63,059 nucleotides of DNA, taken from assembly GCF_006345805.1 (NCBI RefSeq), contig NW_021832143.1, positions 1-63,059 on the forward strand, read 5' to 3'. The stretch is from Octopus sinensis (taxonomy: Eukaryota). The notes below the pieces were generated by a model, which was given only the letters and a program-made list of their open reading frames with translations, made no database searches and was not told the origin of the DNA. Below, in pieces: positions 6,031 to 62,540 of this stretch. Position 1 is the stretch's first letter; the number at the start of each line of letters is the position of its first letter. The translations under genes and the position numbers were made by a program.

Positions 6031-7110
6031 TAGGCTCTTCCCATAAATAATACAGTTTGTTTATACTTCTTTTAGTTTTCAAAATTAAGAAAAACAGAAA
6101 TTCTTTTTTAACATAAAATATATTCTCCCTCATTTCCTACAATGATCTTCTATCTTTATGGTCCACTTACAAGGCCCCTCTCACCAAATTCCCGTCTCCG
6201 TGACGAAAAATACTCTTTCAGTACTGTTCTGACCTCGTCTACAGAATTCATATTTTTTCCGTCCAAATGATATTGAAGACTGCGAAATAAATAATATTCA
6301 GATGGAGCAATGTCTAGCAAATATTGTAGTTGGCGCATCGTTTCCTGTTCAAACTGCTCCAGCCTTTGGATTGTCATCCTTGCTGTATGTGACCAAACAT
6401 TACCCTGATGGAAGAAAACCTTTCGTCTTGAGACCAAAATTGGTCGTTTTTCTTCTAGCGCTAAGCTAATCAATAGATCTCATTAATTATCGTTTGGTTT
6501 TCGTTTAAGATTTCAACGTGTACTAAACCTTTCATGTCCCACCAAACAGATAACAACACCTTACGTGGGTGAAGACCTTCGGTAGTCATGGGTGCTTGTG
6601 TTTCTCCTTTCTCTACTCAGTATCTTCGGCGCTTGACATATTTATAGGGAACCCATTTCTCGTCTCCAGTCACTATTCGGTCGTGACACGTGACAACGAA
6701 GAGGAGCACACATTCACTCTCTGCTCGCGAGAAGACACGGAAAATTTATGAGGAGTCTATTGACCCTCTTTACTGACTCATCCGATGGCGCGCACGTGTC
6801 GATAAATGCTTGAATGAGCAAATCCAAGCTTTTCTAGTCTTCCTCAGCAGTTATGATGGGATTTTGTTCCATCGGGGTATGCATGATGCCCTCGTCGAGT
6901 TTTACAGATGTTTCAGGTTGAGGTTTGTCTTCTAGGCTGTAATTTCTGGCTAAGAATTTGTGGCACCACCGTTGACACTGGCTTACCCTTTCTGTCCGAT
7001 CCCCATATACTGCATTAAAATTCTTCCCACTTTCCGTTACAATGTTGCCTTAATTGAACCCATAAAGCAAAATATGCCGAATATGCTCCTTTGTCGCTTA
7101 TATTATAGCT
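6031..7110 (-). pseudogene. Near full-length decayed mariner (DD34D) transposase element
   Basis: Minus-strand pieces: TKEHIRHILLYGFN..AVYGDRTERVSQCQRW..LEDKP (HTH region); the IVTGDEKW motif region near 6655-6680; GLHPRKVLLSVWWDMKGL; LEEKRPILVSRRKVFFHQGN..DIAPSEYYLFRSLQYHLDGK..VDEVRTVL. Many stops and frameshifts; TIR-like taggctcttcccataaataatacag at 6031. Confidence 0.92.

Positions 7111-17494: not shown

Positions 17495-17556
<62 letters not shown>
16890..17556. repeat. (GAT)n, (GGT)n, (ATC)n, (ACT)n and (TAA)n microsatellite block
   Basis: Directly visible. Confidence 0.95.
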
Positions 17557-17557
<1 letters not shown>

Positions 17558-18162
17558 TATGCCACTGGCCCAGAAAGAATATAAGAGTCGTCATGACAAT
17601 TTAGCAAGGCTTGTCCATTGGACACTTTGCAACAAGTATGTGCTTGATAGAGCAAAAAAGTGGTGCGAATATAAACCCAAAGGCATTACCGAAAATGATA
17701 ATGTAAAGATCCTATGGGATTTTATGATTCAATGCGACCATGAAATAGAGAATAGGAAACCAGACATAGTCTTAATTGAGAAAGAAAACAATCTCTGCTT
17801 GTATAGCATGCCCAGATAACAACAAGGTATGCGATAAGGAAGAAAGACAAGTGGATAGATATGGCAAGTTAGCTCGTGAGTTTAAGCAGTTGTGATCGAT
17901 GAAAAAGGTAGCAGTAGTACCAATAATTGTCGGAGCCCTGGGAGTCGTGAGTAAAAATCTGGAGAAGTACGTGGAACAAATAGGGGCTGCAATAAGGTTA
18001 AAGCACTTGCAGAAAGCAGCACTGCTTGGAACTGCTTGAATACTCCGGATGGTGCTCGAAATATAAGGCGTGTTATCTTAGTTCACTGGTAGTGAACAGC
18101 TGACACTGTAATATATCTGTAGCATTAGAATTTGTACAAAGACAATAAAATATTAATAATAA
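17557..18162 (+). mobile_element. 5'-truncated R4/Dong-clade non-LTR retrotransposon (restriction-like endonuclease domain + 3' UTR)
   Basis: LAQKEYKSRHDNLARLVHW..KILWDFMIQCDHEIENRKPDIVLIEK, then after a frameshift PDNNKVCDKEERQVDRYGKLARE..VVPIIVGALG..LQKAALLGTA*ILRMVLEI*. RHD and PD-(D/E)xK RLE motifs; 3' UTR ends aataaaatattaataataa. Confidence 0.9.
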
Positions 18163-18617: not shown

Positions 18618-18835
18618 GGGCGGTGAGCTGGCCGAATCGTTATCACGCTGGGCGAAATGCTCAGCGGTATTTCATCTGCCGTTACGTTGTGAGTTCAAAT
18701 TCCATCGAGGTCGATTTTCCCTTTCATCCTTTCGCCGTCGATTATATAAGTACCATTTACTCACTGGTGTCGATGTAGTCAACTTAATCCCTTTGTCTGT
18801 CCTTGTTTGTCCCTTCTATGGGCAATAAAGAAATA
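18618..18835 (+). mobile_element. SINE family A (head + core + tail1)
   Basis: gggcggtgagctggccgaatcgttatcacgctgggcgaaatgctcagcggtatttc...gggcaataaagaaata. Confidence 0.9.
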
Positions 18836-26580: not shown

Positions 26581-26775
26581 CAGTAATCCCTCGCAAATAT
26601 CGCGGTTCACCCATCGCGGTTTACCTATCGCGCTTCACCTATCGCGGTTCACCTATCGCGGTTTACCTATTGCGGTTTACCTATCGCGATTTACCTATCG
26701 CGGTTCACCTATCGCGGTTCACCTACCGCGGTTCACCTATCGCGATTCACCTATCGCGGTGTCACCTATGGCGAT
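26581..26775 (+). repeat. pogo/Tigger-like terminus (TA|CAGTAATCCCTCG) followed by a 14-bp minisatellite, ~13 copies (ctatcgcggttcac)
   Basis: Directly visible; units differ by single substitutions. Confidence 0.85.
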
Positions 26776-27430: not shown

Positions 27431-27547
27431 CCTTGACAACCAGGTTACATTGCTACAGCGCCCTCCACTTCCCCACCACAAGTTTAAAAATAGTAATTTT
27501 CTAATTTATAAATCAATGACTAGCGCCACCTCTAGCCGAACAATTAT

Positions 27548-27592
27548 TTTGTGCTGATGAAGAGAAATAACTCAGAAATCGCGATACACAGA
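27548..27592 (+). ncRNA. Minimal type-I hammerhead ribozyme motif
   Basis: Stem I tttgtg/cacaga; CUGAUGA 27554-27560; stem II gag-aaataa-ctc with an A.A mismatch at its base; GAAA 27575-27578; stem III U-CGCG-A (palindromic loop); UA cleavage site after 27586. Confidence 0.75.
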
Positions 27593-28220
27593 TATTGTTT
27601 TGAGCTGAGTGGGGGTGCTAGATTCCCTTGTTCGAAAATATAAGGACACAGATCGTGTCTTATAGCCAGCTGGATACGATGTCTCCTGGGGCTAAATTAC
27701 GACAACATTGGTCCTAAACCAGGAATGCCATGTTGTGTTGGCAAACAATCTTTGCTACAAGGTACTGTTGCTGAACATCTAACGTTGTGAGATTTAAAAA
27801 TAGTAATTTTCTAAAATATATTTTAATATATTTGAATCTGCAGCAGATTCAAATTCAAAACAGCTGTGTTTCACAAGTAAAAAACTTAAAACCTGATTAA
27901 CCTATTAATATTTATACTTCTACATCTATCACCCCATTTTGGCCAGCACTTTATCTTCTCACTTTTCTTCAACGCCTCCTCACTGGACCTTTCCACTGCC
28001 CTTAAGGGGGCAGTACTATAATCGACTTATACTCTCACCCGAAATTGCTGGCCTTTTGTCAACATTTGAAATTAATTGTTAATTGAACAGGAGTTGTACT
28101 TCATTCAATGGAACTTCAGCTTCAACTTTTTACTTGTATGAAATATTCTTCGCTGACAAAATAAATATACCACACAGTGTATGGAGACTTCAGTATAACC
28201 AACGTAGTTCTACAAATAAT

Positions 28221-29429: not shown

Positions 29430-29835
29430 ATGGCTAAGCGAAACCATGAGGCCGACTTCCCGCCTCTACCAATGCTAGAGGTGAGGAAAGCTGAAAGCAA
29501 AACCGTTCCGCCTAGACGCCCACAGGCCTTAGAAGGCCCGAATGCTTCTGTTACTACAACCACTGGCTCCACTAATACTACCATCACCACCACAACCAAC
29601 AAGAATACTGAAAACCATTTTGTCGCAGCTTTAAAGTTAAAGAAGAGAGTAATGTGCTTTTCCAAATAAGAACTGCTCGCCTGTAAAGCAATGTTTAAAA
29701 AAGACGACCTCAGCATACAACTACAGACACCACAAAACATCACGGAAAAAATCGAAAGGACCCCAAATATTTGCAGGCCACTCAACCTAAAAACAAGGTT
29801 ATACGAAAAGGTCACTCAAGAAAATGTTCAAAGTC
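29430..29835 (+). pseudogene. Interrupted ORF, possibly a LINE ORF1-like relic
   Basis: The ORFs at 29430 and 29691 are in one frame separated by a single TAA (29667-29669); N-terminus MAKRNHEADFPPLP; cut off by a SINE. No domain recognised. Confidence 0.25.
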
Positions 29836-30153
29836 GTCTTTACCTGTCATCCGTTCGGGATCGATTAAATAAGTACCAGTTACGCACTGGATTCGATTTA
29901 ATCGACTTAATCCGTTTGTCTGTCCTTGTTTGTCCTCTCTGTGTTTAGCCCCTTGTGGGTAGTAAAGAAATAGGTATTTCGTCTGCTAGGTTCTGAGTTC
30001 GAATTCCGCACAGGTCGACTTTGCCTTTCATCCTTTCGGAGTCGATAAATTAAGTACCGGTTACGTACTGGGGTCGATATAACCGACTTAATCCGTTTGT
30101 CTGTCCTTTATTTGTCCTTTCTCTCCTTAGCCCCTTGTGGGTAGTAAAGAAAT
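29832..30153 (+). mobile_element. SINE family A head-to-tail dimer (core+tail1 twice), 5' truncated
   Basis: Junction agtaaagaaata|ggtatttcgtctg at about 29970. Confidence 0.92.
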
Positions 30154-30689
30154 AAAAATACAGTAGGTCAAACACCAACATAACATAAGATGATACCAAA
30201 ACAAAGAATCACCCACGCACAACACCACCACAACACATTAATAGATAGATAGATATACATATATATATGAATGTATTATATATACACATATACAATACAC
30301 ACACATATAATATTCTTGCAAAACTCGGGGCGAGTCAACGTTAAAAATCTGCACAAAGCTGCCTACCTCTGTATCGTCTAATGTCAATGTTTTCGACATG
30401 TACATGTTTACACAAACACTAAAGTTCTTGACGTTGATAAGTTACTATTCATATGGAGTTCAGGTTTTTAAAAGACATTAGGAGATATAACGTGACTGCA
30501 CCCAGGGGAGTGAATAGAATTGCAATACAGATCGAAGATCAAACTCCATTGTATTGAGAAATCTATATATGTGTTAGTGTGTGTGCGTGCGTGTGTGTGT
30601 GTGTGTGGTGTGTGTGTGTGTGTGCTTGACTGTGTGTGAATAACTGAGAATGATTCCTATGATATTTCTTATGTAAATATAATAGTTAA

Positions 30690-35020: not shown

Positions 35021-35878
35021 ATGAATACATGCGTCGGTGATGAAACTTCTACAAATACATGTATTCATAAAGATTCGTGCGTATGTGAGTGTGTGCGTGG
35101 CGTGTGTGTGTGTATGTGTGCGTGTGTGTGTGCGTGTATGTGTGTGTCTGTGTATGTATTTTCATACCTTTATAATGCACATCTGGTTTCAACAGATTTC
35201 TTAGCATTTGTTAATATATATTTAAATTTATCTTTGTATTATCTGAAAAATCTTGATACTGTTTTACTGCTCCTCTGATATCATCTCAATCTCTAAGAGT
35301 ATGTGCTTCACACATACACAGACACACACAGTCACACAAACACTCACAAATACACATTTGTTATCTGTATACCGTGTGATTACGAAATCTTATAAGCACA
35401 TTTATGTCGATATCTAAATCTTGTAAATCTGTATCATAAAATTACGGAGTATACTCTAAAATCCTTGTAATATATACACGTCCAGCAGATTCTGTCTTTA
35501 TTAAACATACCTTAATACGTATTAATACGTCCTTTCTACAATCTATTTCTTTGTCGCTTCCATCTATAATATATTTACCTATAATATTTTTACCCACCTA
35601 TTTCTGCACTTCTTAGCTCTATTCAAATACAAGAGTTGTGCTTGGCTGTAAGCAATGTTTGAATATATTTTCTTTGTTATTAACCATTATCAAATGTCTT
35701 GTGTACTCTTCTACAAAATTAATTCTTATGCGTTCGTTCTTCTGTTGCATTAATTTGTCATAAATATATTCTGTCTGTTACTTGTTATTTAATAGGATAC
35801 ATAGTACTACATGTATATCGGTAGCTTATGTATCACGATTTCAGAAGAAATCTTCTGATATATATATATATATGTATA

Positions 35879-35934
<56 letters not shown>

Positions 35935-35970
35935 ATATAGTATATTATATATATATATATATATATATAT

Positions 35971-36321
35971 TTAGTGAAGGGAAGAAATGGAGCTGAACGA
36001 AGATTCTACAAAATTCCTTTTTATTATTTTATTATTTTCTACACATGTTTCAAAGGCTCAATATGCGTTGACGTCAACGCATATTGAGAGACAGTTTTGT
36101 GCCATTCATACCATGGGCTACTAGGGAGCATTTTGTTCGAATAGCTTGCTGCGCATTTGTTTGGAGATTTAAATTCCTGGATTTTCCTGAAGAGAAAGCT
36201 GCAAAATGGTCTCCTTATTCAATCCGAATTTGGAAATTTGCAGCCTTTGAAACATGTGTGGAAAATAATAAAAAGGAATTTTGAATAATCTTCGTTCAGC
36301 TCCATTTCTTCCCTTCGCTAA
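35971..36321. mobile_element. Fold-back element with ~85-bp terminal inverted arms and a hammerhead motif (same family as 50178-50495)
   Basis: Arms ttagtgaagggaagaaatggagctgaacgaagatt...acacatgtttcaaaggct and its reverse complement ending at 36321; shared terminus gaagaaatggagctgaacg; HHR motif at 36181-36266. Confidence 0.85.
36181..36266 (+). ncRNA. Hammerhead motif with extended stem II; cleavage triplet mutated (UG)
   Basis: Stem I attttc/gaaaat; CUGAAGA 36187-36193; stem II gaaagctgcaaa/tttgcagccttt; GAAA 36249-36252; C-AUGU-G; position 17 = G at 36260. Confidence 0.7.
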
Positions 36322-36473
36322 ATATATAAAACTTCAATTATCCGCGCTAAGGCACGGTTGCGACACCCCATGGTCGTAACCTCAACCGTGTTTTTTCTGT
36401 TGTGATTTGTGCTACCCAGGTATCGGTTAAATTTTGAATAATCCGTAACAAGATAATTCATTTATCCATTTCA

Positions 36474-36504
<31 letters not shown>

Positions 36505-36510
<6 letters not shown>

Positions 36511-39579: not shown

Positions 39580-39692
39580 CGCTGCTGCACGAAGTATTTC
39601 ATAGCATTTCGCCCGTCTTTCCGTTTTGCTTTCAAATTCCGCCAGGGTCGACCTAGCATTGCATGTTTCCTCATTTCAGGGTCGATAAAATA
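39580..39692 (+). mobile_element. SINE family A fragment interrupted by a DNA-transposon MITE
   Basis: ..caaattccgccagggtcgac..agggtcgataaaaTA, resuming as agtacca at 40471. Confidence 0.75.
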
Positions 39693-40468
39693 CCGTAAAC
39701 CCTCGATTATAATCCACATTTTTTCCCAAAATTTAAAAGTCAAAATCCCTAGTGCGTATTATAAACGAGGTTAAAAATGAAAATTATTTTCTAAGCAATG
39801 TCCGAGTTTCTATTTGCTATCCAGCACTGTTTATTCAGACGCATTTTGTGATGTTGGGCGCTAAAATACCTTAAGCTAAGCCTGAAAGCAATGGAGTCAA
39901 AAAAGAATCATCCATAACTTGCAATAAGCAACATTTATTAAACGATAAAATACCGTAAATCCTGGAGTAAAATCCGCATTTTTCCCAAAATTTAATGGTC
40001 AAAATCCCTAATGCGTAATATATACGAGGTTAAAAATGAAAAATATTTTCTAAGCAATGTCCGAGTCTCTATTTGCTGTCCGACAATTTTTATTCAAACG
40101 CATTTTGTGATGTCGGGCGCGGAAAATACCTTAAGCTAAGCCTGAAAGCAATGAAGCCATCAAAGAATCATCCATAACTTGCAGTAAGCAACATTTATTA
40201 AACGTTATTACTGTTATTTCTTTATTTTCTGCAAACAAAATGCACAAAAAGCTATACGCTTGCATTATGTTATATATACAATTATAATAAATGATATTAC
40301 CGTATACATATACATTTTTACAAACCAAGGACATTATATAGACCTCCTTGACTCAAGTTAGAGAAGGGGTGCGTATTATACACAAGGTTTAGGTTTTTGA
40401 GAGTTACAGCCCCCAAAATATCCCCTGCGTATTATACTCAAGGGCAGTCTATACTCGAGGATTTACGG
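39693..40468. mobile_element. pogo/Tigger-like non-autonomous element with a duplicated 5' 260 bp
   Basis: TIRs TA|ccgtaaa(c/t)cct(c/g)ga and tatactcgaggatttacgg; two diverged copies of the 5' segment start at 39691 and 39951. Confidence 0.85.
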
Positions 40469-44791: not shown

Positions 44792-45150
44792 GGGCGGCGA
44801 ACTGGCAGAAACGTTAGAACGCCGGGCGAGATGCTTAGCAGTATTTCGTCAGCCGCTACGTTCTCAGTTCAAATTCCGCCGAGGTCGACTTTGCCTTTCG
44901 TCCTTTCGGGGTCGATTAAATAAGTACCAGTCACGCACTGGGGTCGATGTAATCGACTTAATCCGTTTGTCTGTCCTTGTTTGTCCTCTCCGTGTTTAGC
45001 CCCTTGTAGGTAGTAAAGAAATAGGTATTTCGTCCGTCGTGGTCGACTTTGCCTTTTATCATTTCGTGATGGATAAATTAAGTACTAGCGACACACTGTG
45101 GTCGATGTAATCGACTAGTCTCCTCACCCCCAAATTTCCGGCCTTCGTTA
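44792..45150 (+). mobile_element. SINE family A dimer (head+core+tail1+core+tail2)
   Basis: Intact head gggcggcgaactggcagaaacgttagaacgccgggcg; junction aaagaaata|ggtatttcgtc at about 45022. Confidence 0.93.
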
Positions 45151-46065: not shown

Positions 46066-46295
46066 TATTTGTTTACTACTCACAAGGGGCTAAACACAGA
46101 GAGGACAAGCAAGGACAGATAAACGGATTAAGTCGATTATATCCACCCCAGTGCGTAACTGGTACTTATTTACTCGACCGCGAAAGGATGAAAGACAAAG
46201 TAGACCTCGGCGGAATTTGAACTCAGAACGAAGCGGCAGACGAAATACTGCTAAGCATCTCGCTCGGCGTGCTATCGTTTCTGCCAGCTCGCCGC
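46066..46295 (-). mobile_element. SINE family A (head+core+tail1)
   Basis: Reverse complement of gcggcgagctggcagaaacgatagcacgccgagcgagatgcttagcagtatttcgtctg... Confidence 0.93.
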
Positions 46296-46311
46296 GTTCC
46301 ATATGTAAATT

Positions 46312-49426: not shown

Positions 49427-49968
49427 CGAGTGTGAGTCAAAAAGTAATGCCATTTTCTTAGGGCAGGTATCATACATCAACACGTGTATCATACTCAAAA
49501 TGAAGCTGGTCCTCTGTGGATCACATCCCTACTTCTCTACATAGTCACCGTTTCTCTCAATAGCAATGTTCCACCTTCGAATGAGAGCATGTATCCCTGC
49601 CCCGTAAAATTCTGTTGACTGTTCTTTGAGCCACTTCTTCCCTACCACCACACTCACCAGATTTAGTACCTTCAGACTATCATCTCTTCGGCGCCATCAT
49701 CTCTTCGGCAAATATTATTCGAGTGACGAGGAAGTGAAAACTGTGGTGAAGAAGTGACTCAAAGTGAACAGTCAACAGAATTTTACGGGGCAGGGATACA
49801 CGCTGTCATTCGAAGGTGGAACATTGCGATTGAGAGAAACGGTGACTATGTCGAGAAGTAGGGATGTGATCCACAGAGGACCAGCTTCATTTTGATGTAT
49901 GATACATGTTCCTGTGTTGGTATCTATACTTCCCTTAAACAAAATGACATTACTTTTGACTCAGCTCG
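49427..49968. mobile_element. Mariner-derived fold-back element: two inverted copies of the transposon 3' end
   Basis: Arms about 49427-49640 and 49748-49968 are imperfect reverse complements; TA at both ends; spacer and right arm encode PPHSPDLVPSDYHLFG..EEVKTVVKK..GIHAVIRRWNIAIERNGDYVEK*. Confidence 0.92.
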
Positions 49969-50234
49969 TATATATATATATATATATAATATATATATAT
50001 ATATATAATATATATATATATATAATGTGAAATAGAAAGATGAATAATCTTGTAGTGGATTAATCAAAAGTTTAACCGATACCTTAGTAGCAAAAATCAC
50101 AGCAGTGAACAGCACGGTTGGAGGTACAACCATCTGGCGTTGCAACCGTGCGTTGGTGCGATAATTGAAATTAAAACCATTATTGGTGAATTGAAGAAAT
50201 GGAGCTGAACGCAGATTGAACAGAAATCGTTTTA

Positions 50235-50322
50235 TTTCATTCTACACGTGTTTCGAAAGGCACAAATTACCAAAATCCGATTGAATAATGGGACCATATT
50301 GTGTTTCTCTTCAGGAAGAAAA
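50235..50322 (-). ncRNA. Hammerhead motif (minus-strand copy, canonical G10.1-C11.1)
   Basis: CUGAAGA 50314-50308; stem II gaaa-cacaa/ttgtg-cc-tttc; GAAA 50254-50251; C-ACGU-G; UA site after 50243. Confidence 0.75.
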
Positions 50323-50350
50323 AAGGAAATCCGTTCCAACGGATTTCCTT

Positions 50351-50438
50351 TTTTCTTCCTGAAGAAAGACACAATATGGTCCCATTATTCAATCGGATTT
50401 TGGTAATTTGTGCCTTTCGAAACACGTGTAGAATGAAA
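50351..50438 (+). ncRNA. Hammerhead motif (plus-strand copy)
   Basis: Stem I ttttcttc/gaatgaaa; CUGAAGA 50359-50365; GAAA 50419-50422; C-ACGU-G (palindromic); UA site after 50430; A.C mismatch at the base of stem II. Confidence 0.72.
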
Positions 50439-50491
50439 TAAAACGATTTCTGTTCAATCTGCGTTCAGCTCCATTTCTTCAATTCACCAAT

Positions 50492-50522
<31 letters not shown>

Positions 50523-52916
50523 CGCCCGCGCGCGTGTGTGTATTTAATGTAAACAGCAGTTTGCAAAAAGAAGAATGATAATTGTCCCTAAATGTGACTA
50601 GGGTTTTAGAAAACACATATTGCTAGAAATAAGAGCTAAACCGCTTTAATGTTGTAGTTGATGCTGCTTCTCCACTCATTCCTCTTACATCGTCATCATC
50701 ATCTCTTTATCATCATTTCGTCATCATCATCATCCTCATCTTCTTCTTTTTCTTATACTTCTCCCCGTTGATCTCCTCCACCCCTCATCCTTCTTCTCTC
50801 CACCTCCGCCTCTCCCTTCTTATTCTGCTTCTTCCTCTCCTTCTCCCCCATCTTCTCGTCGTCGCAATTTCTGGGTCACAGCAGCAATATACATGCTCAG
50901 CTTTCTCCTCATACGCCAGGCTGAATCGGCCAAAGAAATTTCGTTTTAGGAATATCACTGCCCAAGGAATAAACCTCTATTTAACCTTTCATTCATTCCA
51001 TAGCAAAACTAAACAACCATCGTCGAGACCGACAGAGAATTCACGGGTGTTTTGTTATTATCAAATTTCCTACACTTAATAGCTAAATTCTATATCTAAT
51101 TTCCCATACCTTTATAAAATATGCAACTTCCATAACAACATAACATAAATTTCCCTTTGATGTGATGTGCTGTGATGTTTTAGATGTGCCGTGGTGTCGC
51201 GAGGCTTGACCTGTCCTGTCCTGTTCTGGTCTGTTCTATAACATTAAAAAAAAAAGATCATTCAAATATCTAAATCATGACTCCAAGATTTAATATGTAT
51301 GTTAGATTCAACAGAATCTTTTGATCAATCTAAGATTATTGGACATAATCAACCGGCAAAATAAATAAATAATAATTATTTAATTAAAAAGAAAAATCTT
51401 ATAAATTAGAAAATTCTGTGTTGGAATACTTAAGTTAATGGCGCTGGTTGTGATTAGAAATTATTAAAAGTAAGCGAGAGGAAAAAATCTTTATAAGTTG
51501 CTCGATTGCTTTCAGTTGGTGATTATATCGCTTTCAATTTAACCCCGCCCATACAAAGCTCTGAAAAAATATGTAATTAATTCAATAAAATTTAATTAAA
51601 ACACTCATTGTAATTAATTAATTAATTTCATTAAGGACATATTTATTAATTGATTTATTGAAACGAATTCAACGAATACAGCCACAGCCTCATTATTCCC
51701 GCATGTACGTGCACAAGCATGGCCACGCACATGGATACACAGTCACGTACACAGACATACACACACACACAAGCACACATATATGGACACACACACGCAC
51801 ACTCACACACACAGAGCTACTAACTACTTCACGTTTCCAGTATTCACTACACACGGTGAAATGATAACGTATCTTGCTTATGAGTATATATATATGCATA
51901 TACATACATACATATATATATATATAAGCACACACACACATATATATATACATAAATATACATATATATATATACATATATATATATATACATACATATA
52001 TATATATATATTATAACATACATATATATATATATATAATATTATACGTACATACCCGCGAATACACACATGTTTCCCTATATACATACATATGTATGTG
52101 TGTGTGTGTGTGTGTGTGTGTTTGTGCGTATAAATATGTATGCAACCCCCGACACATATATAACTCCTAAATTGTGTTTCTTTGTTTCATCCTATTTCAA
52201 CTGGACAAGGGAGACGCATTGTTGTCTGTCTCCTGTCCAAGCTTCTTTCTTCGCGTTCGCCACCACAATCTCGTTCAGACTTAGCAGCTCTTCCTGCTTG
52301 TTTTCACTGTCCTGTTTTTGTCACCAATTATCACCCTCCGCAAAATCACAAAATTTTTCATGACTGGGCAAGTTAGGTTGCAGAAAACCCAAAGACAGCA
52401 ATTCTAATCTCTTCTACCTTTGCGGCCCGCGTAACCGTACAAGTTCCCCTTCCAGAAAACCGTGTAATAATACAAAGATATAGGCCAAAATATTTCGCGT
52501 ACCAATCCAAAATTTAAAGACATAAACATCGAGCTGAAACTAAACATTTGAAATCACATTCGGTGTTGATCTGCGAAGCTGGAATATTTTATTGGCTTTT
52601 CATACCCAAATTGGTTTGCATATATATGTAACCGGATAGGAATTAATGGATAACATAAACCAAAGCGGGAATTAAGTAATCGCTTTTATTTGATTAGAGC
52701 TGGTTATTACAGGCGATGTCGCAGGGACACTCAACTCCGAGTCCATTGACCTTTTCTCAAGGCTGAATAGGAAGAAACTGTAAACATACATACACCACTA
52801 CTATATATGTATATATATATATGTTTGTGTGTGCTTCTCTGTGTGTGTGTGTGTGTGTGTGTACATATATATGCGTCAAAGATATATAAATAATTTTAGT
52901 ATTGGTATTAAAATTA

Positions 52917-53550
52917 AGGCCATGAGATCGCAGAATGGTTAGCGCGCCTGGTGAAATACTTAGTGGCATTTCGTCTGGCCCCACGCTCTGAGTTCAAATT
53001 CCAACGAGGTCGTCTTTGCCTTTCAACATTCGGTATCGATAAATTAAGTACCCGTTATGTACTGGGTTCGTGTAACCCACCGGACCCCTCTGCACACATT
53101 TCAGGACTTGTCCCTATAGTAAAACGGATTATCAATATTATCATTGCAAGGCGTCGAGCTAGCAGAATCGTTAGCACGCCAGGCGAAATGCTTAGCGGTA
53201 TTTCGTCTGTCGTACGTTAGTTGTGAGTTCAAATTCCGCGAGGTCGACTTTGCCTTTCATCTTTCGGGGTCGATAAATTAAGTACCAGTTACGCACTGGG
53301 GTCAATGTAATCGACTTAATACCTATGTCTGTCCTTGTTTGTCCCCTCTATGTTTAGCCCCTTGTGGGTAATAAAGAAATAGGTATTTCGTCTGCGGCTA
53401 CGTTCTGAGTTCAAATTCCGCCGAGGTCGACTTTGCCTTTCATCTATTAGGGGTCGATAAGTTAAGTACCAGTTGTGTACTGGGGTCGATCTAATCGACT
53501 GGCCCCTTCTTCCAAAATTTCAGGCCTTGCGTCTATAATAGAAAGGATTA
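52917..53550 (+). mobile_element. Cluster of SINE family A: a monomer (52917-53140) followed by a dimer (53149-53550)
   Basis: Three cores; junction aaagaaata|ggtatttcgtctg at about 53381; both the first and last units end in tail2. Confidence 0.93.
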
Positions 53551-54261
53551 TTGGTAAGTCGAGCTCAGAACTCAAAATGCCTCAAATGTCACCATAAAAC
53601 CTCTGGCCTAGCACCCTAGCAATTCAACAAAGCAAATCACGCGGACTGCTATTTTATTTATCGGCCCAGAAGCAAACGAAGAATAAATTTTACCACAATA
53701 GGATTAGAACCCAAGTAGAAAATATTTGGACAAGGACAGAAAACCAGTCTAACAATACGATGACCACATTAACAATTAGACAACCCTATCAACCACATAA
53801 GGATCTATTTCAATTATTGTTTGCAATTTAAAATGTGAACGGTTTTATATTTCGTTGTTTTAAATTGTTAAATCAAAATTCGTCGTTTTGAAACGTTATA
53901 TAGGACGTGACGTTGCTGATAGAATAACCAATTTATATAAAAGCAGAAATTAGATTGTGTTACGTTAGACACATCTTGTATAATTTGGGATTGGAATTCT
54001 TTGTTAGGTAATATTACTAAAATTTATTATTTCAAACGGTGCAGTACATAACGTTATGTTTTCTGTATTATGTGCATATCTGCGTCATGTTATTTGCCTG
54101 CACATTTGCTATTATTTGCAATGTATCTCTGAATTAAACGAGTTGCGTATTGTCTTCCGATGCAACGTTCCGGTTATCTCTATTTCGAGATCTATTTGCA
54201 TCTGTTAGAAATTTATTATCGCACATTTGTTTGTCCACTCTATTTAAACTATTTACACCAA

Positions 54262-56538: not shown

Positions 56539-56690
56539 AGGACGAATGTTGCTGTAATTTCTCCTGCGGCTAAATTACAGCAACATTCGTCCTAAACCAG
56601 GACGGCCATGATATGTTGGCAAATATTTACATAAACATAAATTCGTTGTATCTTCATACTCAGGTGCGGCTGATATTTTCCAATAAATGT
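56539..56690 (+). mobile_element. Fragment of the 27.6-27.8 kb repeat with a 22-bp inverted duplication at its left end
   Basis: aggacgaatgttgctgtaattt / aaattacagcaacattcgtcct; the continuation caacattcgtcctaaaccagga..tgttggcaaa matches 27705-27745. Confidence 0.75.
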
Positions 56691-59319: not shown

Positions 59320-60275
59320 TATTGGATGGAAGGATGGATAGGTGGATGGATGGATGGATGGCTGGGTGGATGGATGGATGGATGGGTGGATAGATGGATA
59401 GCTGGGTGGATGGATGGATGGATGCATGGATGGGCCGGTGGATGGATGGATGGATGGATGGATGGGTGGATAGATGGATGGATGGATAGGTGGATGGGTG
59501 GATAGATGGATAGCTGGGTGGATGGATGGATGGATGCATGGATGGGTCGGTGGATGGATGGATGGGTGGATAGATGGATGGCTGGGTGGATGGATGGATG
59601 GCTGCATGGATGGGTCGGTGGATAGATGGATGGCTGGATAGATGGATGGGTGGATAGATGGATGGATGGGTGGATGGATGGATGGCTGCATGGATGGGTC
59701 GGTGGATAGATGGATGGCTGGATAGATGGATGGGTGGATAGATGGATGGATGGGTGGATGGATGCATGGATGCATGGATGGCTGGGTCGGTGGATGGATG
59801 GATGGGTGGATAGATGGATGGCTGGATAGATGGATGGCTGGATAGATGGATGGATGGGTGGATGGATGCATGGATGCATGGATGGGTCGGTGGATGGATG
59901 GATGGGTGGATAGATGGATGGCTGGGTGGATGGATGGATGGCTGCATGGATGGGTCGGTGGATGGATGGATGGGTGGATAGATGGATGGGTGGATAGATG
60001 GATGGGTGGATAGATGGATGGCTGGGTGGATGAATGGATGGATGCATAGATGGGTCGGTGGATGGATGGATGGGTGGATAGATGGATGGCTGGATAGATG
60101 GATGGGTGGATAGATGGATGGCTGGGTGGATGGATGGATGGCTGCATGGAAGGGTCGGTGGATGGATGGATGGGTGGATAGATGGATGGGTGGATAAATG
60201 GATGGGTAGATGGATGGCTGGCTGGGTGGATGGATGCATGGATGGATGCATGGATGGGTGGATCGATGGATGAAA
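59320..60275. repeat. ~1 kb (GGAT)n-derived satellite with recurring variant cassettes
   Basis: Variant motifs gcatggatgggtcggt, gggtggatagat and ggctgg recur at irregular spacing. Confidence 0.95.
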
Positions 60276-62239: not shown

Positions 62240-62540
62240 CTTACCAATTTATCAGGGTCGATAAATTAATCACCAGTTACGCACTGGGGGTTGATGTAAT
62301 CGACTTAATCCGTGTGTCTGTCCTTGTTTGTCCGCTCTGTGTTTAGCCTCTTTTGGTTAGTAAAGAAATAGGTATTTCGTCTGTTTTTTACGCTCTGAGT
62401 TCAAATTCCGCCGAGGTCAACTTTGCCTTTCATCCTTTTGGGGTCGATTAAATAGGTACCAGTTATGCACTGGTGTGGATCTAATCGACTGGCCCCTTCC
62501 CCCAAAATTTCGGGTCTTGTGCCTAGAGTAGAATAGAATA
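62240..62540 (+). mobile_element. SINE family A 5'-truncated dimer (core+tail1+core+tail2)
   Basis: Junction agtaaagaaata|ggtatttcgtctg at about 62370; tail2 ggtcttgtgcctagagtagaatagaatag. Confidence 0.92.

What the first reader, a model, noticed from the sequence alone, without database searches (positions are those of the whole stretch)
50178..50495. 158-bp-arm palindrome carrying a hammerhead ribozyme motif on each strand
Seen: the two arms match at 156 of 158 positions around a 2-nt loop. Each arm holds a full type-I HHR core: CUGAAGA, a long stem II, GAAA, a one-bp stem III with the palindromic loop ACGU, a UA site and a pairing stem I. Known: minimal HHRs with self-complementary stem III loops, which work as dimers, are typical of Penelope-like pseudo-LTRs and animal retrozymes, and PLEs make inverted terminal copies by template switching. 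Inference: this is a young, ORF-less, ribozyme-bearing fold-back element with an HHR in both polarities. In a read-through transcript the antisense arm is made first, so the hairpin probably traps the ribozyme and yields a long dsRNA (ADAR or Dicer substrate) instead.
Basis: partly seen in the sequence, partly recalled or inferred. Interest (0 to 1): 0.9.

Follow-up and report, generated by a model that had tools for sequence, protein, structure and literature searches.

The report
Fold-back repeat carrying hammerhead-like motifs
A near-perfect 326-bp palindrome in an octopus-like genome is a young head-to-head copy of a short, gene-less mobile repeat that sits in (TA)n microsatellites. Each arm carries a hammerhead-ribozyme-like motif of the kind known from Penelope-like retroelements, so it is an unusual variant of a known thing rather than a new kind.

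Summary
In detail: the arms 50178-50335 and 50338-50495 match at 156 of 158 positions around a 2-nt spacer. Each arm has CUGAAGA, GAAA, AC-ACGU-GU and A17, with predicted cuts after 50430 (+) and 50243 (-).

The palindrome is not a free-standing element. It is part of a repeat unit of about 0.5 kb, bounded by (TA)n on both sides. This unit is copy 1 (50025-50499). A second copy, about 78% identical, lies at 35971-36478 (copy 2).

The unit consists of an inverted arm, a forward arm with the hammerhead-like motif, and a one-sided 150-nt tail. Arms within a locus are 95-100% identical. Arms between loci are 82-87% identical.

The minus-strand motif is canonical (G10.1-C11.1). The plus-strand motif has an A·C mismatch at that pair. 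In copy 2 the complete motif has G17 and has lost C11.1.

Helix II is 53-55 nt, far longer than the 4-8 bp usually described. Rfam Hammerhead_1 aligns end to end but scores only 15.3 and 11.0 bits against a threshold of 34. A descriptor of the Penelope-like type expects 0.009 hits per window; three were found at two loci.

No reverse transcriptase or GIY-YIG reading frame lies nearby, and no further copies could be fetched.

Best reading (0.5): a Penelope-like-derived non-autonomous element with a decaying hammerhead, whose read-through RNA folds into a long hairpin of -272 kcal/mol. Interest is moderate to low.

The parts
49969..50024 (.). (TA)n microsatellite abutting the tail end of copy 1
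   Evidence: TRF row 49969-50024, period 2; sequence
50025..50173 (-). Tail X of copy 1, about 150 nt, read on the minus strand downstream of arm B. It contains the hairpin CACGGUUG...CAACCGUG with an inner helix CAAC/GUUG.
   Evidence: Homologous to 36327-36478 of copy 2. The inner helix reads CGAC/GUCG in copy 2, a change on both sides that keeps the pair (sequences; consensus fold).
50174..50335 (-). Left arm of the palindrome (arm B when read on the minus strand). It carries the canonical hammerhead-like motif: helix I 5' strand 50335-50315, CUGAAGA 50314-50308, helix II 50307-50255 (53 nt, G10.1-C11.1), GAAA 50254-50251, AC-ACGU-GU 50251-50244, A17 at 50243, helix I 3' strand 50242-50219.
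   Evidence: Rfam RF00163 aligns over its full length to 50320-50237 on the minus strand: 15.3 bits, E = 0.35 in a 133-nt search, gathering score 34.
50336..50337 (.). 2-nt spacer (CC) at the axis of symmetry, 21 nt upstream of each CUGAAGA
50338..50499 (+). Right arm (arm A). It carries the hammerhead-like motif with a weakened helix II base: helix I 5' strand 50338-50358, CUGAAGA 50359-50365, helix II 50366-50418 (A10.1·C11.1 mismatch), GAAA 50419-50422, AC-ACGU-GU 50422-50429, A17 at 50430, helix I 3' strand 50431-50454.
   Evidence: Rfam RF00163 aligns to 50353-50436 on the plus strand: 11 bits, E = 9.4, gathering score 34.
50500..50523 (.). (TA)n microsatellite abutting the outer end of arm A
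   Evidence: Sequence; inverted-repeat rows I8 and I13
35971..36478 (+). Copy 2 of the same repeat unit, about 78% identical and in the opposite orientation to copy 1. Its parts are: inverted arm D 35971-~36060; a 32-nt perfect palindrome 36059-36090; a non-palindromic centre 36091-36165; forward arm C 36166-36326 (CUGAAGA 36187-36193, helix II 55 nt, GAAA 36249-36252, AC-AUGU-GU, G17 at 36260); tail X 36327-36478. It is bounded by (TA)n at 35858-35970 and 36479-36506.
   Evidence: BLAST and nhmmer; sequence; repeats; TRF

Best explanation
The palindrome is a young head-to-head (fold-back) copy of a short interspersed repeat with no reading frame, in a cephalopod (Octopus-like) genome. The family inserts into (TA)n microsatellites.

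Each full unit has a forward part: about 160 nt with a type-I minimal hammerhead motif, followed by a 150-nt structured tail. Upstream of it lies an inverted duplicate of the hammerhead-bearing part.

I read the family as a non-autonomous derivative, or a 5'-truncated 3' end, of a Penelope-like retroelement (PLE). It would be mobilised in trans by a PLE reverse transcriptase and GIY-YIG endonuclease encoded elsewhere.

The inverted arm would be made at integration, when the nascent strand snaps back or switches template at the 5'-truncation point. That would explain why the two arms of copy 1 end at the same nucleotide.

The hammerhead has an atypical 53-55-nt helix II. It was probably functional in the family ancestor and needed dimerisation through the self-complementary ACACGUGU. 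It is now decaying: only the minus-strand copy in this palindrome keeps every canonical feature.

Any read-through RNA of the locus folds into a perfect hairpin of about 160 bp. As it stands, the locus is therefore far more likely to yield long double-stranded RNA than a self-cleaving ribozyme.

Shown here: the palindrome, the motif, the family unit, the (TA)n junctions, greater arm similarity within a locus than between loci, and the hairpin energetics.

Inferred: the PLE relationship, the snap-back origin, the ancestral activity, and the fate of the double-stranded RNA.
For: 1. Palindrome and motif coordinates are confirmed.

2. There is a second family member. Homology stops at the (TA)n arrays on both sides of both copies, so 4 of 4 junctions lie in (TA)n. 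Perfect (TA)n of 6 or more units covers only 4.5% of the window. (TA)n is the reported preferred target of Naiad and Neptune PLEs, and inverted 5'-truncated copies next to the forward copy are a reported PLE hallmark (PMC8557442).

3. Over the last 83 nt, arm identity is 100% (A-B) and 95% (C-D) within a locus, but 82-87% between loci. The arms were therefore made or homogenised locus by locus. The inner end of the inverted arm of copy 2 is itself a 32-nt perfect snap-back palindrome.

4. The motif has features that the PLE hammerhead literature lists as non-random (PMC4209133):
- type-I topology;
- a very short helix III with a palindromic loop, so that 15.1-16.1 forms the self-complementary 8-mer ACACGUGU;
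- G10.1-C11.1 in arm B.
The PLE-type descriptor expects 0.0087 hits per window, and 3 were observed at 2 loci. None was found in the reversed window or in 96 kb of other Octopus DNA.

5. Rfam Hammerhead_1 aligns over its full length to exactly the predicted region on both arms.

6. The motif is kept in copy 2 at about 78% identity. The CUGAAGA and GAAAC boxes are intact. A distal helix II segment is changed on both sides with pairing kept: CACAA/UUGUG becomes CUGCAAA/UUUGCAG. Both copies form a long helix I of 14-18 bp from partly different sequence.

7. The states at 10.1, 10.3 and 17, and the CpG in loop 3 (ACGU against AUGU), point to a fully canonical ancestor.

8. Opposite-strand minimal hammerheads 100-700 bp apart have been reported for truncated PLEs (PMC4209133).

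9. The hairpin folds at -272 kcal/mol. The hammerhead-constrained arms fold at about -15 to -17 kcal/mol.
Against: - No Rfam hammerhead model reaches its threshold: 15.3 and 11.0 bits against 34. At window scale those scores are not significant.
- Helix II is 53-55 nt, against the 4-8 bp described for animal and PLE hammerheads.
- A single arm folds no better than shuffled sequence, z about 0.
- The hammerhead-constrained fold is 6-9 kcal/mol worse than the minimum-energy fold. In copy 1 the minimum-energy fold sequesters the core in a CUUUUUUC/GAAGAAAG hairpin.
- The test for conserved structure on the two copies is weak: sense z = -1.97, and 6.5% of column shuffles reach the observed structure conservation index.
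- Only one of the three complete motifs is fully canonical.
- No RVT or GIY-YIG domain was found among stop-free segments of 58 aa or more between about 26 and 63 kb.
- There is no tandem head-to-tail arrangement.
- The inverted arm lacks the 150-nt tail. A simple 'inverted 5'-truncated full 3' end' would carry it.
- Both inverted arms end at the same homologous point, which is what a true terminal inverted repeat would do.
- No further copies were found to test any of this.
Confidence: 0.5

Rival explanations
1. It is a fold-back miniature DNA transposon with long terminal inverted repeats that targets TA dinucleotides, and therefore accumulates in (TA)n. The hammerhead-like motif is either coincidental or a captured fragment with no role. 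The 150-nt tail is a neighbouring or nested related element, and the composite was mobilised through its outer ends.
For: - The arms are long inverted repeats, and both inverted arms end at the same homologous position at the arm/tail linker.
- The outer ends of the whole unit show a weak inverted match: TTTAGTGAAGGGAAGAAATG against CATTTATCCATTTCAATAAA, 15 of 20 on my reading row I15.
- The arm and the tail share a 14-mer at the same distance from their ends in copy 2, P = 0.002.
- An unrelated mariner-derived fold-back element with 130-nt arms lies immediately upstream at 49458-49930. This genome therefore does make fold-back copies of DNA transposon ends.
- No reverse transcriptase is nearby.
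- Rfam scores are below threshold.
Against: - The right arm is not terminal in the repeated unit. The tail is present on the same side in both copies.
- The chance of a PLE-type hammerhead descriptor hit falling in a given arm is of the order of 1e-5. That figure is 0.0087 per 126 kb of both strands, scaled to a 162-nt arm.
- The motif boxes and helices are kept in a 78%-identical copy, with changes on both sides of helix II and of the tail hairpin. A DNA transposon has no need for that.
- No transposase relative or recognisable terminal signature was found.
- The arm/tail similarity is not significant in copy 1.
Confidence: 0.22
2. The element does carry a real hammerhead. The perfect palindrome, however, arose after insertion, by a DNA-level event. 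Candidates are a replication template switch or hairpin-primed repair of a break between pre-existing short inverted arms, helped by the cruciform-prone (TA)n surroundings. On this reading it did not arise during retrotransposition.
For: - Copy 2 shows what a precursor could look like: 90-nt inverted arms, a unique centre and a small snap-back palindrome.
- The arms of copy 1 end symmetrically at one nucleotide, as a fold-back of a single strand would give.
- Arms within a locus are more alike than arms between loci. That also fits gene conversion.
Against: - Nothing in the sequence separates this from snap-back at integration.
- Long perfect palindromes made by break repair usually extend into flanking DNA. 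This one stops at the element boundary (matches end within a few nt of the (TA)n).
Confidence: 0.15
3. The palindrome is an assembly or sequencing fold-back chimera and does not exist in the genome.
For: - Near-perfect symmetry with a 2-nt spacer.
- PLE-type inverted structures are known to trouble assemblies (PMC8557442).
Against: - The arms differ at 2-3 positions, which pure strand-switch artefacts do not produce.
- The palindrome is only 326 bp and is embedded in unique, asymmetric flanks: the tail on one side only.
- An independent, diverged copy has the same inverted-arm architecture.
Confidence: 0.03
4. The locus is a hairpin-RNA or microRNA-type gene, and the hammerhead resemblance is irrelevant.
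For: - The hairpin is very stable.
- Rfam microRNA precursor models (MIR5048, mir-627 and others) give low E-values on both strands.
Against: - All those hits are far below their gathering scores (for example 98 against 160 bits). They occur symmetrically on both strands, as any long perfect hairpin would.
- The sequence is a diverged interspersed repeat whose other copy is not a perfect hairpin.
- There are no expression data.
Confidence: 0.03

Closest known systems
Minimal type-I hammerhead ribozymes of Penelope-like elements (Cervera & de la Pena 2014, PMC4209133; Rfam RF00163 Hammerhead_1)
   Same: - Order of elements: helix I, CUGANGA, helix II, GAAA, a very short helix III with a palindromic loop, UH, helix I.
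- The self-complementary 15.1-16.1 segment (ACACGUGU, against the Rfam consensus ACGCGCGU) implies action as a dimer.
- G10.1-C11.1 is present in arm B.
- Occurrence as dispersed single motifs and as pairs on opposite strands 100-700 bp apart.
- Motifs with a small palindromic helix III are reported in several invertebrates (Drosophila, rotifers, shrimps, mosquitoes).
   Different: - Helix II is 53-55 nt with internal loops, instead of 4-8 bp.
[quoted passage not shown]
- Rfam scores are 15.3 and 11.0 bits against a gathering score of 34.
- Two of the three complete copies carry a defect (A·C at 10.1/11.1; G17 together with loss of C11.1).
- Activity was not tested.
Penelope-like element insertions with pseudo-LTRs and an inverted 5'-truncated copy (Craig et al. 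2021, PMC8557442)
   Same: - Insertion into (TA)n microsatellites.
- An inverted partial copy lies directly upstream of the forward copy.
- There is one-sided extra sequence at one end.
- Non-autonomous derivatives that share only the 3' end with autonomous elements are described.
- Some Naiad elements have hammerhead core halves 35-50 nt apart ('HHR_half_core').
   Different: - No RT or GIY-YIG reading frame lies in or near either copy.
- The one-sided 'tail' is 150 nt, not 30-40 bp.
- The inverted arm lacks that tail.
- No direct partial tandem (pseudo-LTR) is evident beyond one weak 14-mer.
- Similarity to an autonomous PLE could not be tested.
- That paper describes cephalopod Naiads as ancient remnants only.
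Animal non-LTR retrozymes (Cervera & de la Pena 2020, PMC7229834; Li et al. 2026 preprint, 10.64898/2026.07.22.740005)
   Same: - Short (170-400 nt), AT-rich, hammerhead-bearing repeats without reading frames.
- They are proposed to be PLE-derived.
- The hammerheads have a weak helix III and need dimers.
   Different: Retrozymes are head-to-tail tandem arrays that give monomeric linear and circular RNAs. Here the copies are head-to-head. A single transcript therefore holds one sense ribozyme plus its antisense, which blocks both dimer formation and release of a monomer.
Fold-back or long-TIR miniature DNA transposons (for example the mariner-derived fold-back at 49458-49930 in this window)
   Same: Long, nearly identical inverted arms; small size; no coding capacity; TA-rich insertion sites.
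   Different: - The unit is asymmetric (one-sided tail).
- It carries a ribozyme-type motif and hairpins that are kept through changes on both sides.
- No transposase-derived sequence is present in the arms. The neighbouring element, by contrast, still encodes a mariner C-terminus in its arms.

Membership tests
Hammerhead ribozyme, type I (PLE-type minimal variant) | Catalytic core boxes C3-A9 (CUGANGA), G12-A14 plus A15.1 (GAAA), U16.1 and H17 (not G), in type-I order | tested here: met
   Met on arm A (50359-50430, plus strand) and arm B (50314-50243, minus strand). Arm C of copy 2 has G17 at 36260, so that copy fails.
Hammerhead ribozyme, type I (PLE-type minimal variant) | Helices I and II pair directly against the core, with the G10.1-C11.1 closing pair | tested here: inconclusive
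   - Arm B: G-C, then 3 A-U pairs, a CC bulge and 5 bp; helix I is 18 bp with bulges.
- Arm A: A·C at 10.1/11.1.
- Arm C: G·U, with C11.1 deleted.
The hammerhead-constrained folds are 6-9 kcal/mol above the minimum-energy fold.
Hammerhead ribozyme, type I (PLE-type minimal variant) | Short helix III with a palindromic loop (dimer-forming 15.1-16.1 segment) | tested here: met
   ACACGUGU in copy 1 is perfectly self-complementary. ACAUGUGU in copy 2 is self-complementary with two G·U pairs.
Hammerhead ribozyme, type I (PLE-type minimal variant) | [quoted passage not shown] | tested here: not met
   Helix II spans 53 nt in copy 1 and 55 nt in copy 2. No bulged nucleotide follows A9.
Hammerhead ribozyme, type I (PLE-type minimal variant) | Rfam covariance-model score at or above gathering (RF00163, 34 bits) | tested here: not met
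   No hit at gathering over the whole window. In 133-nt searches arm B scores 15.3 bits and arm A 11.0 bits, each over the full model length. Arm C gives no hammerhead hit at E up to 10.
Hammerhead ribozyme, type I (PLE-type minimal variant) | Covariation of helices across family members | tested here: inconclusive
   - Only two loci are available.
- One helix II segment is changed on both sides with pairing kept (CACAA/UUGUG to CUGCAAA/UUUGCAG).
- Helix I is kept with partly different sequence.
- RNAalifold on the sense strand gives z = -1.97, and 6.5% of shuffles reach the observed structure conservation index. The antisense strand gives z = -1.0.
Hammerhead ribozyme, type I (PLE-type minimal variant) | Site-specific self-cleavage 3' of H17 | not testable with these tools
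   Needs in vitro transcription and cleavage assays.
Penelope-like retroelement, or a non-autonomous derivative of one | RT (telomerase-like) plus GIY-YIG endonuclease reading frame in the element or adjacent to it | tested here: not met
   Pfam scan of all stop-free segments of 58 aa or more from about 26-63 kb: 0 families. The element's own reading frames are 73 aa or shorter. Short, decayed remnants were not excluded.
Penelope-like retroelement, or a non-autonomous derivative of one | Insertion bias for microsatellites, (TA)n in the Neptune and Naiad clades | tested here: met
   All four junctions of the two copies abut (TA)n. Perfect (TA)n of 6 or more units covers 4.5% of the window.
Penelope-like retroelement, or a non-autonomous derivative of one | Complex tandem or inverted arrangement: an inverted 5'-truncated copy next to the forward copy, and pseudo-LTR direct repeats | tested here: inconclusive
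   An inverted partial copy is present at both loci. A direct-repeat (pseudo-LTR) relation between the arm end and the tail end rests on a single 14-mer in copy 2 only.
Penelope-like retroelement, or a non-autonomous derivative of one | Sequence similarity of the 3' end to an autonomous PLE of the same genome | not testable with these tools
   No cephalopod genome collection was searchable by DNA. The metagenome scan gave only chance 19-mers. 96 kb of Octopus DNA holds no copy.
Animal non-LTR retrozyme | Head-to-tail tandem repeats of a 170-400-nt hammerhead-bearing monomer | tested here: not met
   There are no direct tandem copies. The arrangement is head-to-head.
Fold-back miniature DNA transposon | Terminal inverted repeats at both ends of the mobile unit, flanked by a fixed-length target-site duplication | tested here: inconclusive
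   The long inverted arms exist, but the right arm is internal to the repeated unit because the tail follows it. The outer ends match only 15 of 20. A TA duplication cannot be read inside (TA)n.
microRNA or hairpin-RNA precursor | Match to a curated precursor family at gathering score | tested here: not met
   The best hit is MIR5048 at 98 bits against 160. It is symmetric on both strands, which is generic for any long hairpin.

The most novel reading that the evidence does not exclude
The family is a live, cephalopod-specific class of PLE-dependent fold-back elements in which the ribozyme and the palindrome form a switch. Single-arm or forward-only transcripts would self-cleave, through an unusually long, possibly regulated helix II. 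Fold-back copies would instead trap the ribozyme and feed long perfect double-stranded RNA to ADAR or Dicer. This would happen in an animal lineage known for massive A-to-I editing, so retroelement insertion architecture would decide between ribozyme processing and double-stranded-RNA signalling.
Probability: 0.07. Interest if true: 0.7.

Novelty: new variant of a known kind. Interest (0 to 1): 0.35.

Why it matters
If the hammerhead is genuine, three things follow.
- It extends PLE-type minimal hammerheads to a cephalopod genome. The papers I could search report none there.
- It extends them to an architecture with a helix II of more than 50 nt. Current descriptors and Rfam thresholds miss that, so genome surveys may undercount such ribozymes.
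- The perfect head-to-head copy is a clean natural example of how PLE-style inverted insertions can turn a ribozyme-bearing repeat into a template for long double-stranded RNA.

On present evidence, though, this is one decaying copy of a small repeat family. It is ordinary genome furniture with an unusual twist, not a new system.

Tried and rejected
1. Rfam at gathering over the whole window gave nothing. Rfam at E up to 10 on 471 nt gave only generic microRNA-hairpin hits. Only when the search space was cut to 133 nt did Hammerhead_1 appear, below threshold. Arm C gave no hammerhead hit.

2. More copies by DNA pattern. The conserved 19-mer GAAGAAATGGAGCTGAACG found 18 loci in metagenome contigs, all chance 19-23-nt matches. 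It found none in viral contigs.

3. More copies through proteins. A concatenated six-frame translation of both copies searched against 5.8 billion proteins gave no hit.

4. Contigs of the same species through transposable-element proteins.
- Mariner and LINE fragments led only to another species: L019 is 73% identical at the nucleotide level and holds no element.
- The SINE reading frame identified Octopus and gave 96 kb (L020, L021). These hold no copy of the element and no hammerhead descriptor hit.

5. nhmmer with profiles of the arm and of the tail found no further diverged copies in the window.

6. No tRNA-like head for a SINE reading: ARAGORN found no tRNA, and I saw no convincing A or B boxes by eye.

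7. Segmental duplication was rejected, because homology between the two loci stops at the (TA)n arrays.

Segments shorter than 58 aa were listed but not scanned.

9. The supplementary consensus file of Craig et al. 2021 is not held. Lunse et al. 2017 is not held.

10. Folding of a single arm gave no stability signal.
Full report
**1. Observation**

The inverted repeat is real. The repeat finder gives arms 50174-50335 and 50338-50499: 162 nt, 98% complementary, 2-nt spacer.

As RNA the 326-nt stretch folds into one uninterrupted hairpin of -272 kcal/mol, z = -37.

Each arm, read 5' to 3' on its own strand, contains these elements in order:
- a pyrimidine-rich helix I strand;
- CUGAAGA;
- 53 nt;
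- GAAA;
- C-ACGU-G;
- U-A;
- a purine-rich strand that pairs back to the first.

The only two internal differences between the arms (50366/50307 and 50368/50305) hit helix II positions 10.1 and 10.3. The minus-strand motif (arm B) therefore has the canonical G10.1-C11.1 pair. The plus-strand motif (arm A) has A·C.

**2. What it belongs to**

The palindrome is not a free-standing element. A BLAST of the arm against the window finds a second, diverged copy at about 35971-36326. Alignment shows that the homology continues through about 150 nt on one side only.

The repeated unit is 50025-50499 (copy 1, reverse orientation) and 35971-36478 (copy 2), about 76-78% identical. Homology stops exactly at (TA)n arrays on both sides of both copies. 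This is a discrete mobile unit, not a segmental duplication.

The unit reads: inverted arm, junction, forward arm with the hammerhead-like motif, then a 150-nt tail X. The tail has its own hairpin, CACGGUUG...CAACCGUG. Its inner helix changes from CAAC/GUUG to CGAC/GUCG between the copies.

In copy 2 the inverted arm is only about 90 nt. It ends inside helix II in a 32-nt perfect palindrome (36059-36090). About 75 nt of unique sequence separates it from the forward arm.

Over the last 83 nt, arm identity is 100% and 95% within a locus but 82-87% between loci. The inverted arm was therefore generated or homogenised separately at each locus.

nhmmer finds no further copies in the window.

The host is a cephalopod. 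The window's abundant SINE-like repeat translates to a sequence 94% identical to an Octopus vulgaris predicted protein. 96 kb of other Octopus DNA contain no copy of the element.

No RT or GIY-YIG domain was found among stop-free segments of 58 aa or more between about 26 and 63 kb.

**3. Is the hammerhead real?**

Evidence for:
- The core boxes and type-I topology are complete on arms A and B.
- The 15.1-16.1 segment ACACGUGU is perfectly self-complementary. This is the dimer-forming feature that defines PLE-type minimal hammerheads (PMC4209133; PMC6765202).
- A descriptor with that feature expects 0.0087 hits per window under local Markov shuffles, and 3 were found at 2 loci. A looser descriptor expects 0.087. 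It found 1 weak hit in the reversed window and none in 96 kb of other Octopus DNA.
- Rfam Hammerhead_1 aligns end to end to the predicted region of both arms.
- The boxes are kept in copy 2. One helix II segment changes on both sides with pairing kept (CACAA/UUGUG to CUGCAAA/UUUGCAG). A helix I of 14-18 bp forms in both copies.
- The states shared among the four arms imply a fully canonical ancestor.

Evidence against:
- Rfam scores are 15.3 and 11.0 bits against a gathering score of 34, and nothing appears at window scale.
- Helix II is 53-55 nt instead of 4-8 bp.
- The usual bulge after A9 is missing.
- Single arms have z about 0.
- The hammerhead-constrained fold is 6-9 kcal/mol above the minimum-energy fold.
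- The test for conserved structure on two sequences is weak: z = -1.97, with 6.5% of shuffles as good.
- Arm C has G17 and has lost C11.1.

My estimate is about 0.65 that the motif descends from a functional hammerhead. It is much lower that either copy here is active. Arm B is the only intact candidate.

**4. Mechanism (inferred)**

Three independent features match published PLE behaviour:
- insertion into (TA)n;
- an inverted partial copy upstream of the forward copy;
- a minimal hammerhead with a palindromic helix III.

These are documented in PMC8557442 and PMC4209133. The latter paper also reports minimal hammerheads on opposite strands 100-700 bp apart.

I therefore read the family as a non-autonomous PLE derivative mobilised in trans. 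The inverted arm would arise by snap-back or template switching at the 5'-truncation point. In copy 1 both arms end at the same nucleotide. In copy 2 there is a short 16+16 snap-back.

Points this does not explain well:
- The inverted arm lacks the tail.
- Both inverted arms end at the same TA-rich linker. Microhomology with the (TA)n target is my ad hoc explanation.
- No pseudo-LTR is visible.

A fold-back DNA transposon is the main rival, at 0.22. A mariner-derived fold-back with 130-nt arms lies right next door. An assembly artefact is unlikely, because the arms differ at 2-3 sites, the flanks are asymmetric, and an independent copy shares the architecture.

**5. Function**

Within one transcript there is one sense ribozyme and its perfect antisense. 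The 160-bp hairpin (-272 kcal/mol) will dominate over a fold worth about -15 to -17 kcal/mol. No second sense copy is present in cis for dimerisation.

ADAR or Dicer processing is untested.

**6. Comparison and novelty**

This is a variant of a known kind: PLE-type hammerhead repeats and PLE inverted insertions. Its unusual points are the very long helix II, the perfect head-to-head form and the cephalopod host.

It fails the retrozyme definition, because it has no tandem arrays. It also fails the Rfam threshold. PLE membership could not be tested directly, because no cephalopod genome was searchable.

Interest is moderate to low (0.35).

Noticed in passing
window 49458-49930: A mariner-derived fold-back element lies immediately upstream of copy 1. 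Its arms are 49495-49624 and 49766-49895 (130 nt, 97% complementary, 141-nt spacer). The arms still encode a mariner transposase C-terminus (...FYGAGIHAVIRRWNIAIERNGDYVEK). This genome therefore makes fold-back copies of transposon ends by at least one other route.
   Followed up: partly
window 27554-27586 (+): A second, compact PLE-type hammerhead-like motif: CUGAUGA-A-GAG-AAAUAA-CUC-A-GAAA-U-CGCG-A-UA, then CACAGA. It has a 6/6 helix I and a palindromic loop CGCG, but A·A at 10.1/11.1 (or an extra A before G12). Rfam gives no hit at E up to 10. It is flanked by 28-35-nt direct repeats at 27483-27517 and 27793-27827.
   Followed up: partly
window 36059-36090: A 32-nt perfect palindrome, CTCAATATGCGTTGAC|GTCAACGCATATTGAG (it contains TGACGTCA), lies at the inner end of the inverted arm of copy 2. 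It occupies the place of helix II.
   Followed up: partly
window, e.g. 53145-53500, 44793-45116, 46066-46301, 29833-30154, 62252-62490, 18619-18820, 1-387: A very abundant SINE-like repeat of about 185-350 bp has at least 12 copies in the window, some in local tandem (52906-53551). Its translation is 94% identical to an Octopus vulgaris 'hypothetical predicted protein' and matches several O. bimaculoides proteins. This identifies the window as cephalopod and shows that repeat-derived reading frames are present in those annotations.
   Followed up: partly
window 56540-56595 and 27679-27745: A 21-bp perfect hairpin (GGACGAATGTTGCTGTAATTT...AAATTACAGCAACATTCGTCC), followed by TAAACCAGGA..., is related at 86% over 67 nt to a sequence about 100 nt downstream of the 27554 motif. 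It is another small structured repeat family.
   Followed up: no
window 26598-26773; 39683-40204; 59323-60272: A 14-bp minisatellite (TATCGCGGTTCACC, 12.5 copies), a 259-bp unit repeated twice in tandem, and a (TGGA)n-type array of about 950 bp. Overall the window is extremely rich in microsatellites: (TA)n, (ATAG)n, (AGAT)n, (AAG)n and (TTA)n.
   Followed up: no
window 6159-7049 (-) and 17554-18112 (+): Decayed mariner transposase fragments (up to 49% identity to SETMAR/Mos1-like proteins) and a LINE C-terminal remnant. The remnant is 60-64% identical at the protein level and 73% at the nucleotide level to an ENA eukaryotic contig, L019.
   Followed up: partly
window 50198-50475, both strands: Rfam microRNA precursor models (MIR5048, MIR4208, mir-627, MIR6425) give E-values down to 1e-22 on both strands. 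All are far below their gathering scores. This is a generic response of covariance models to any long perfect hairpin and a caution for automated annotation.
   Followed up: yes
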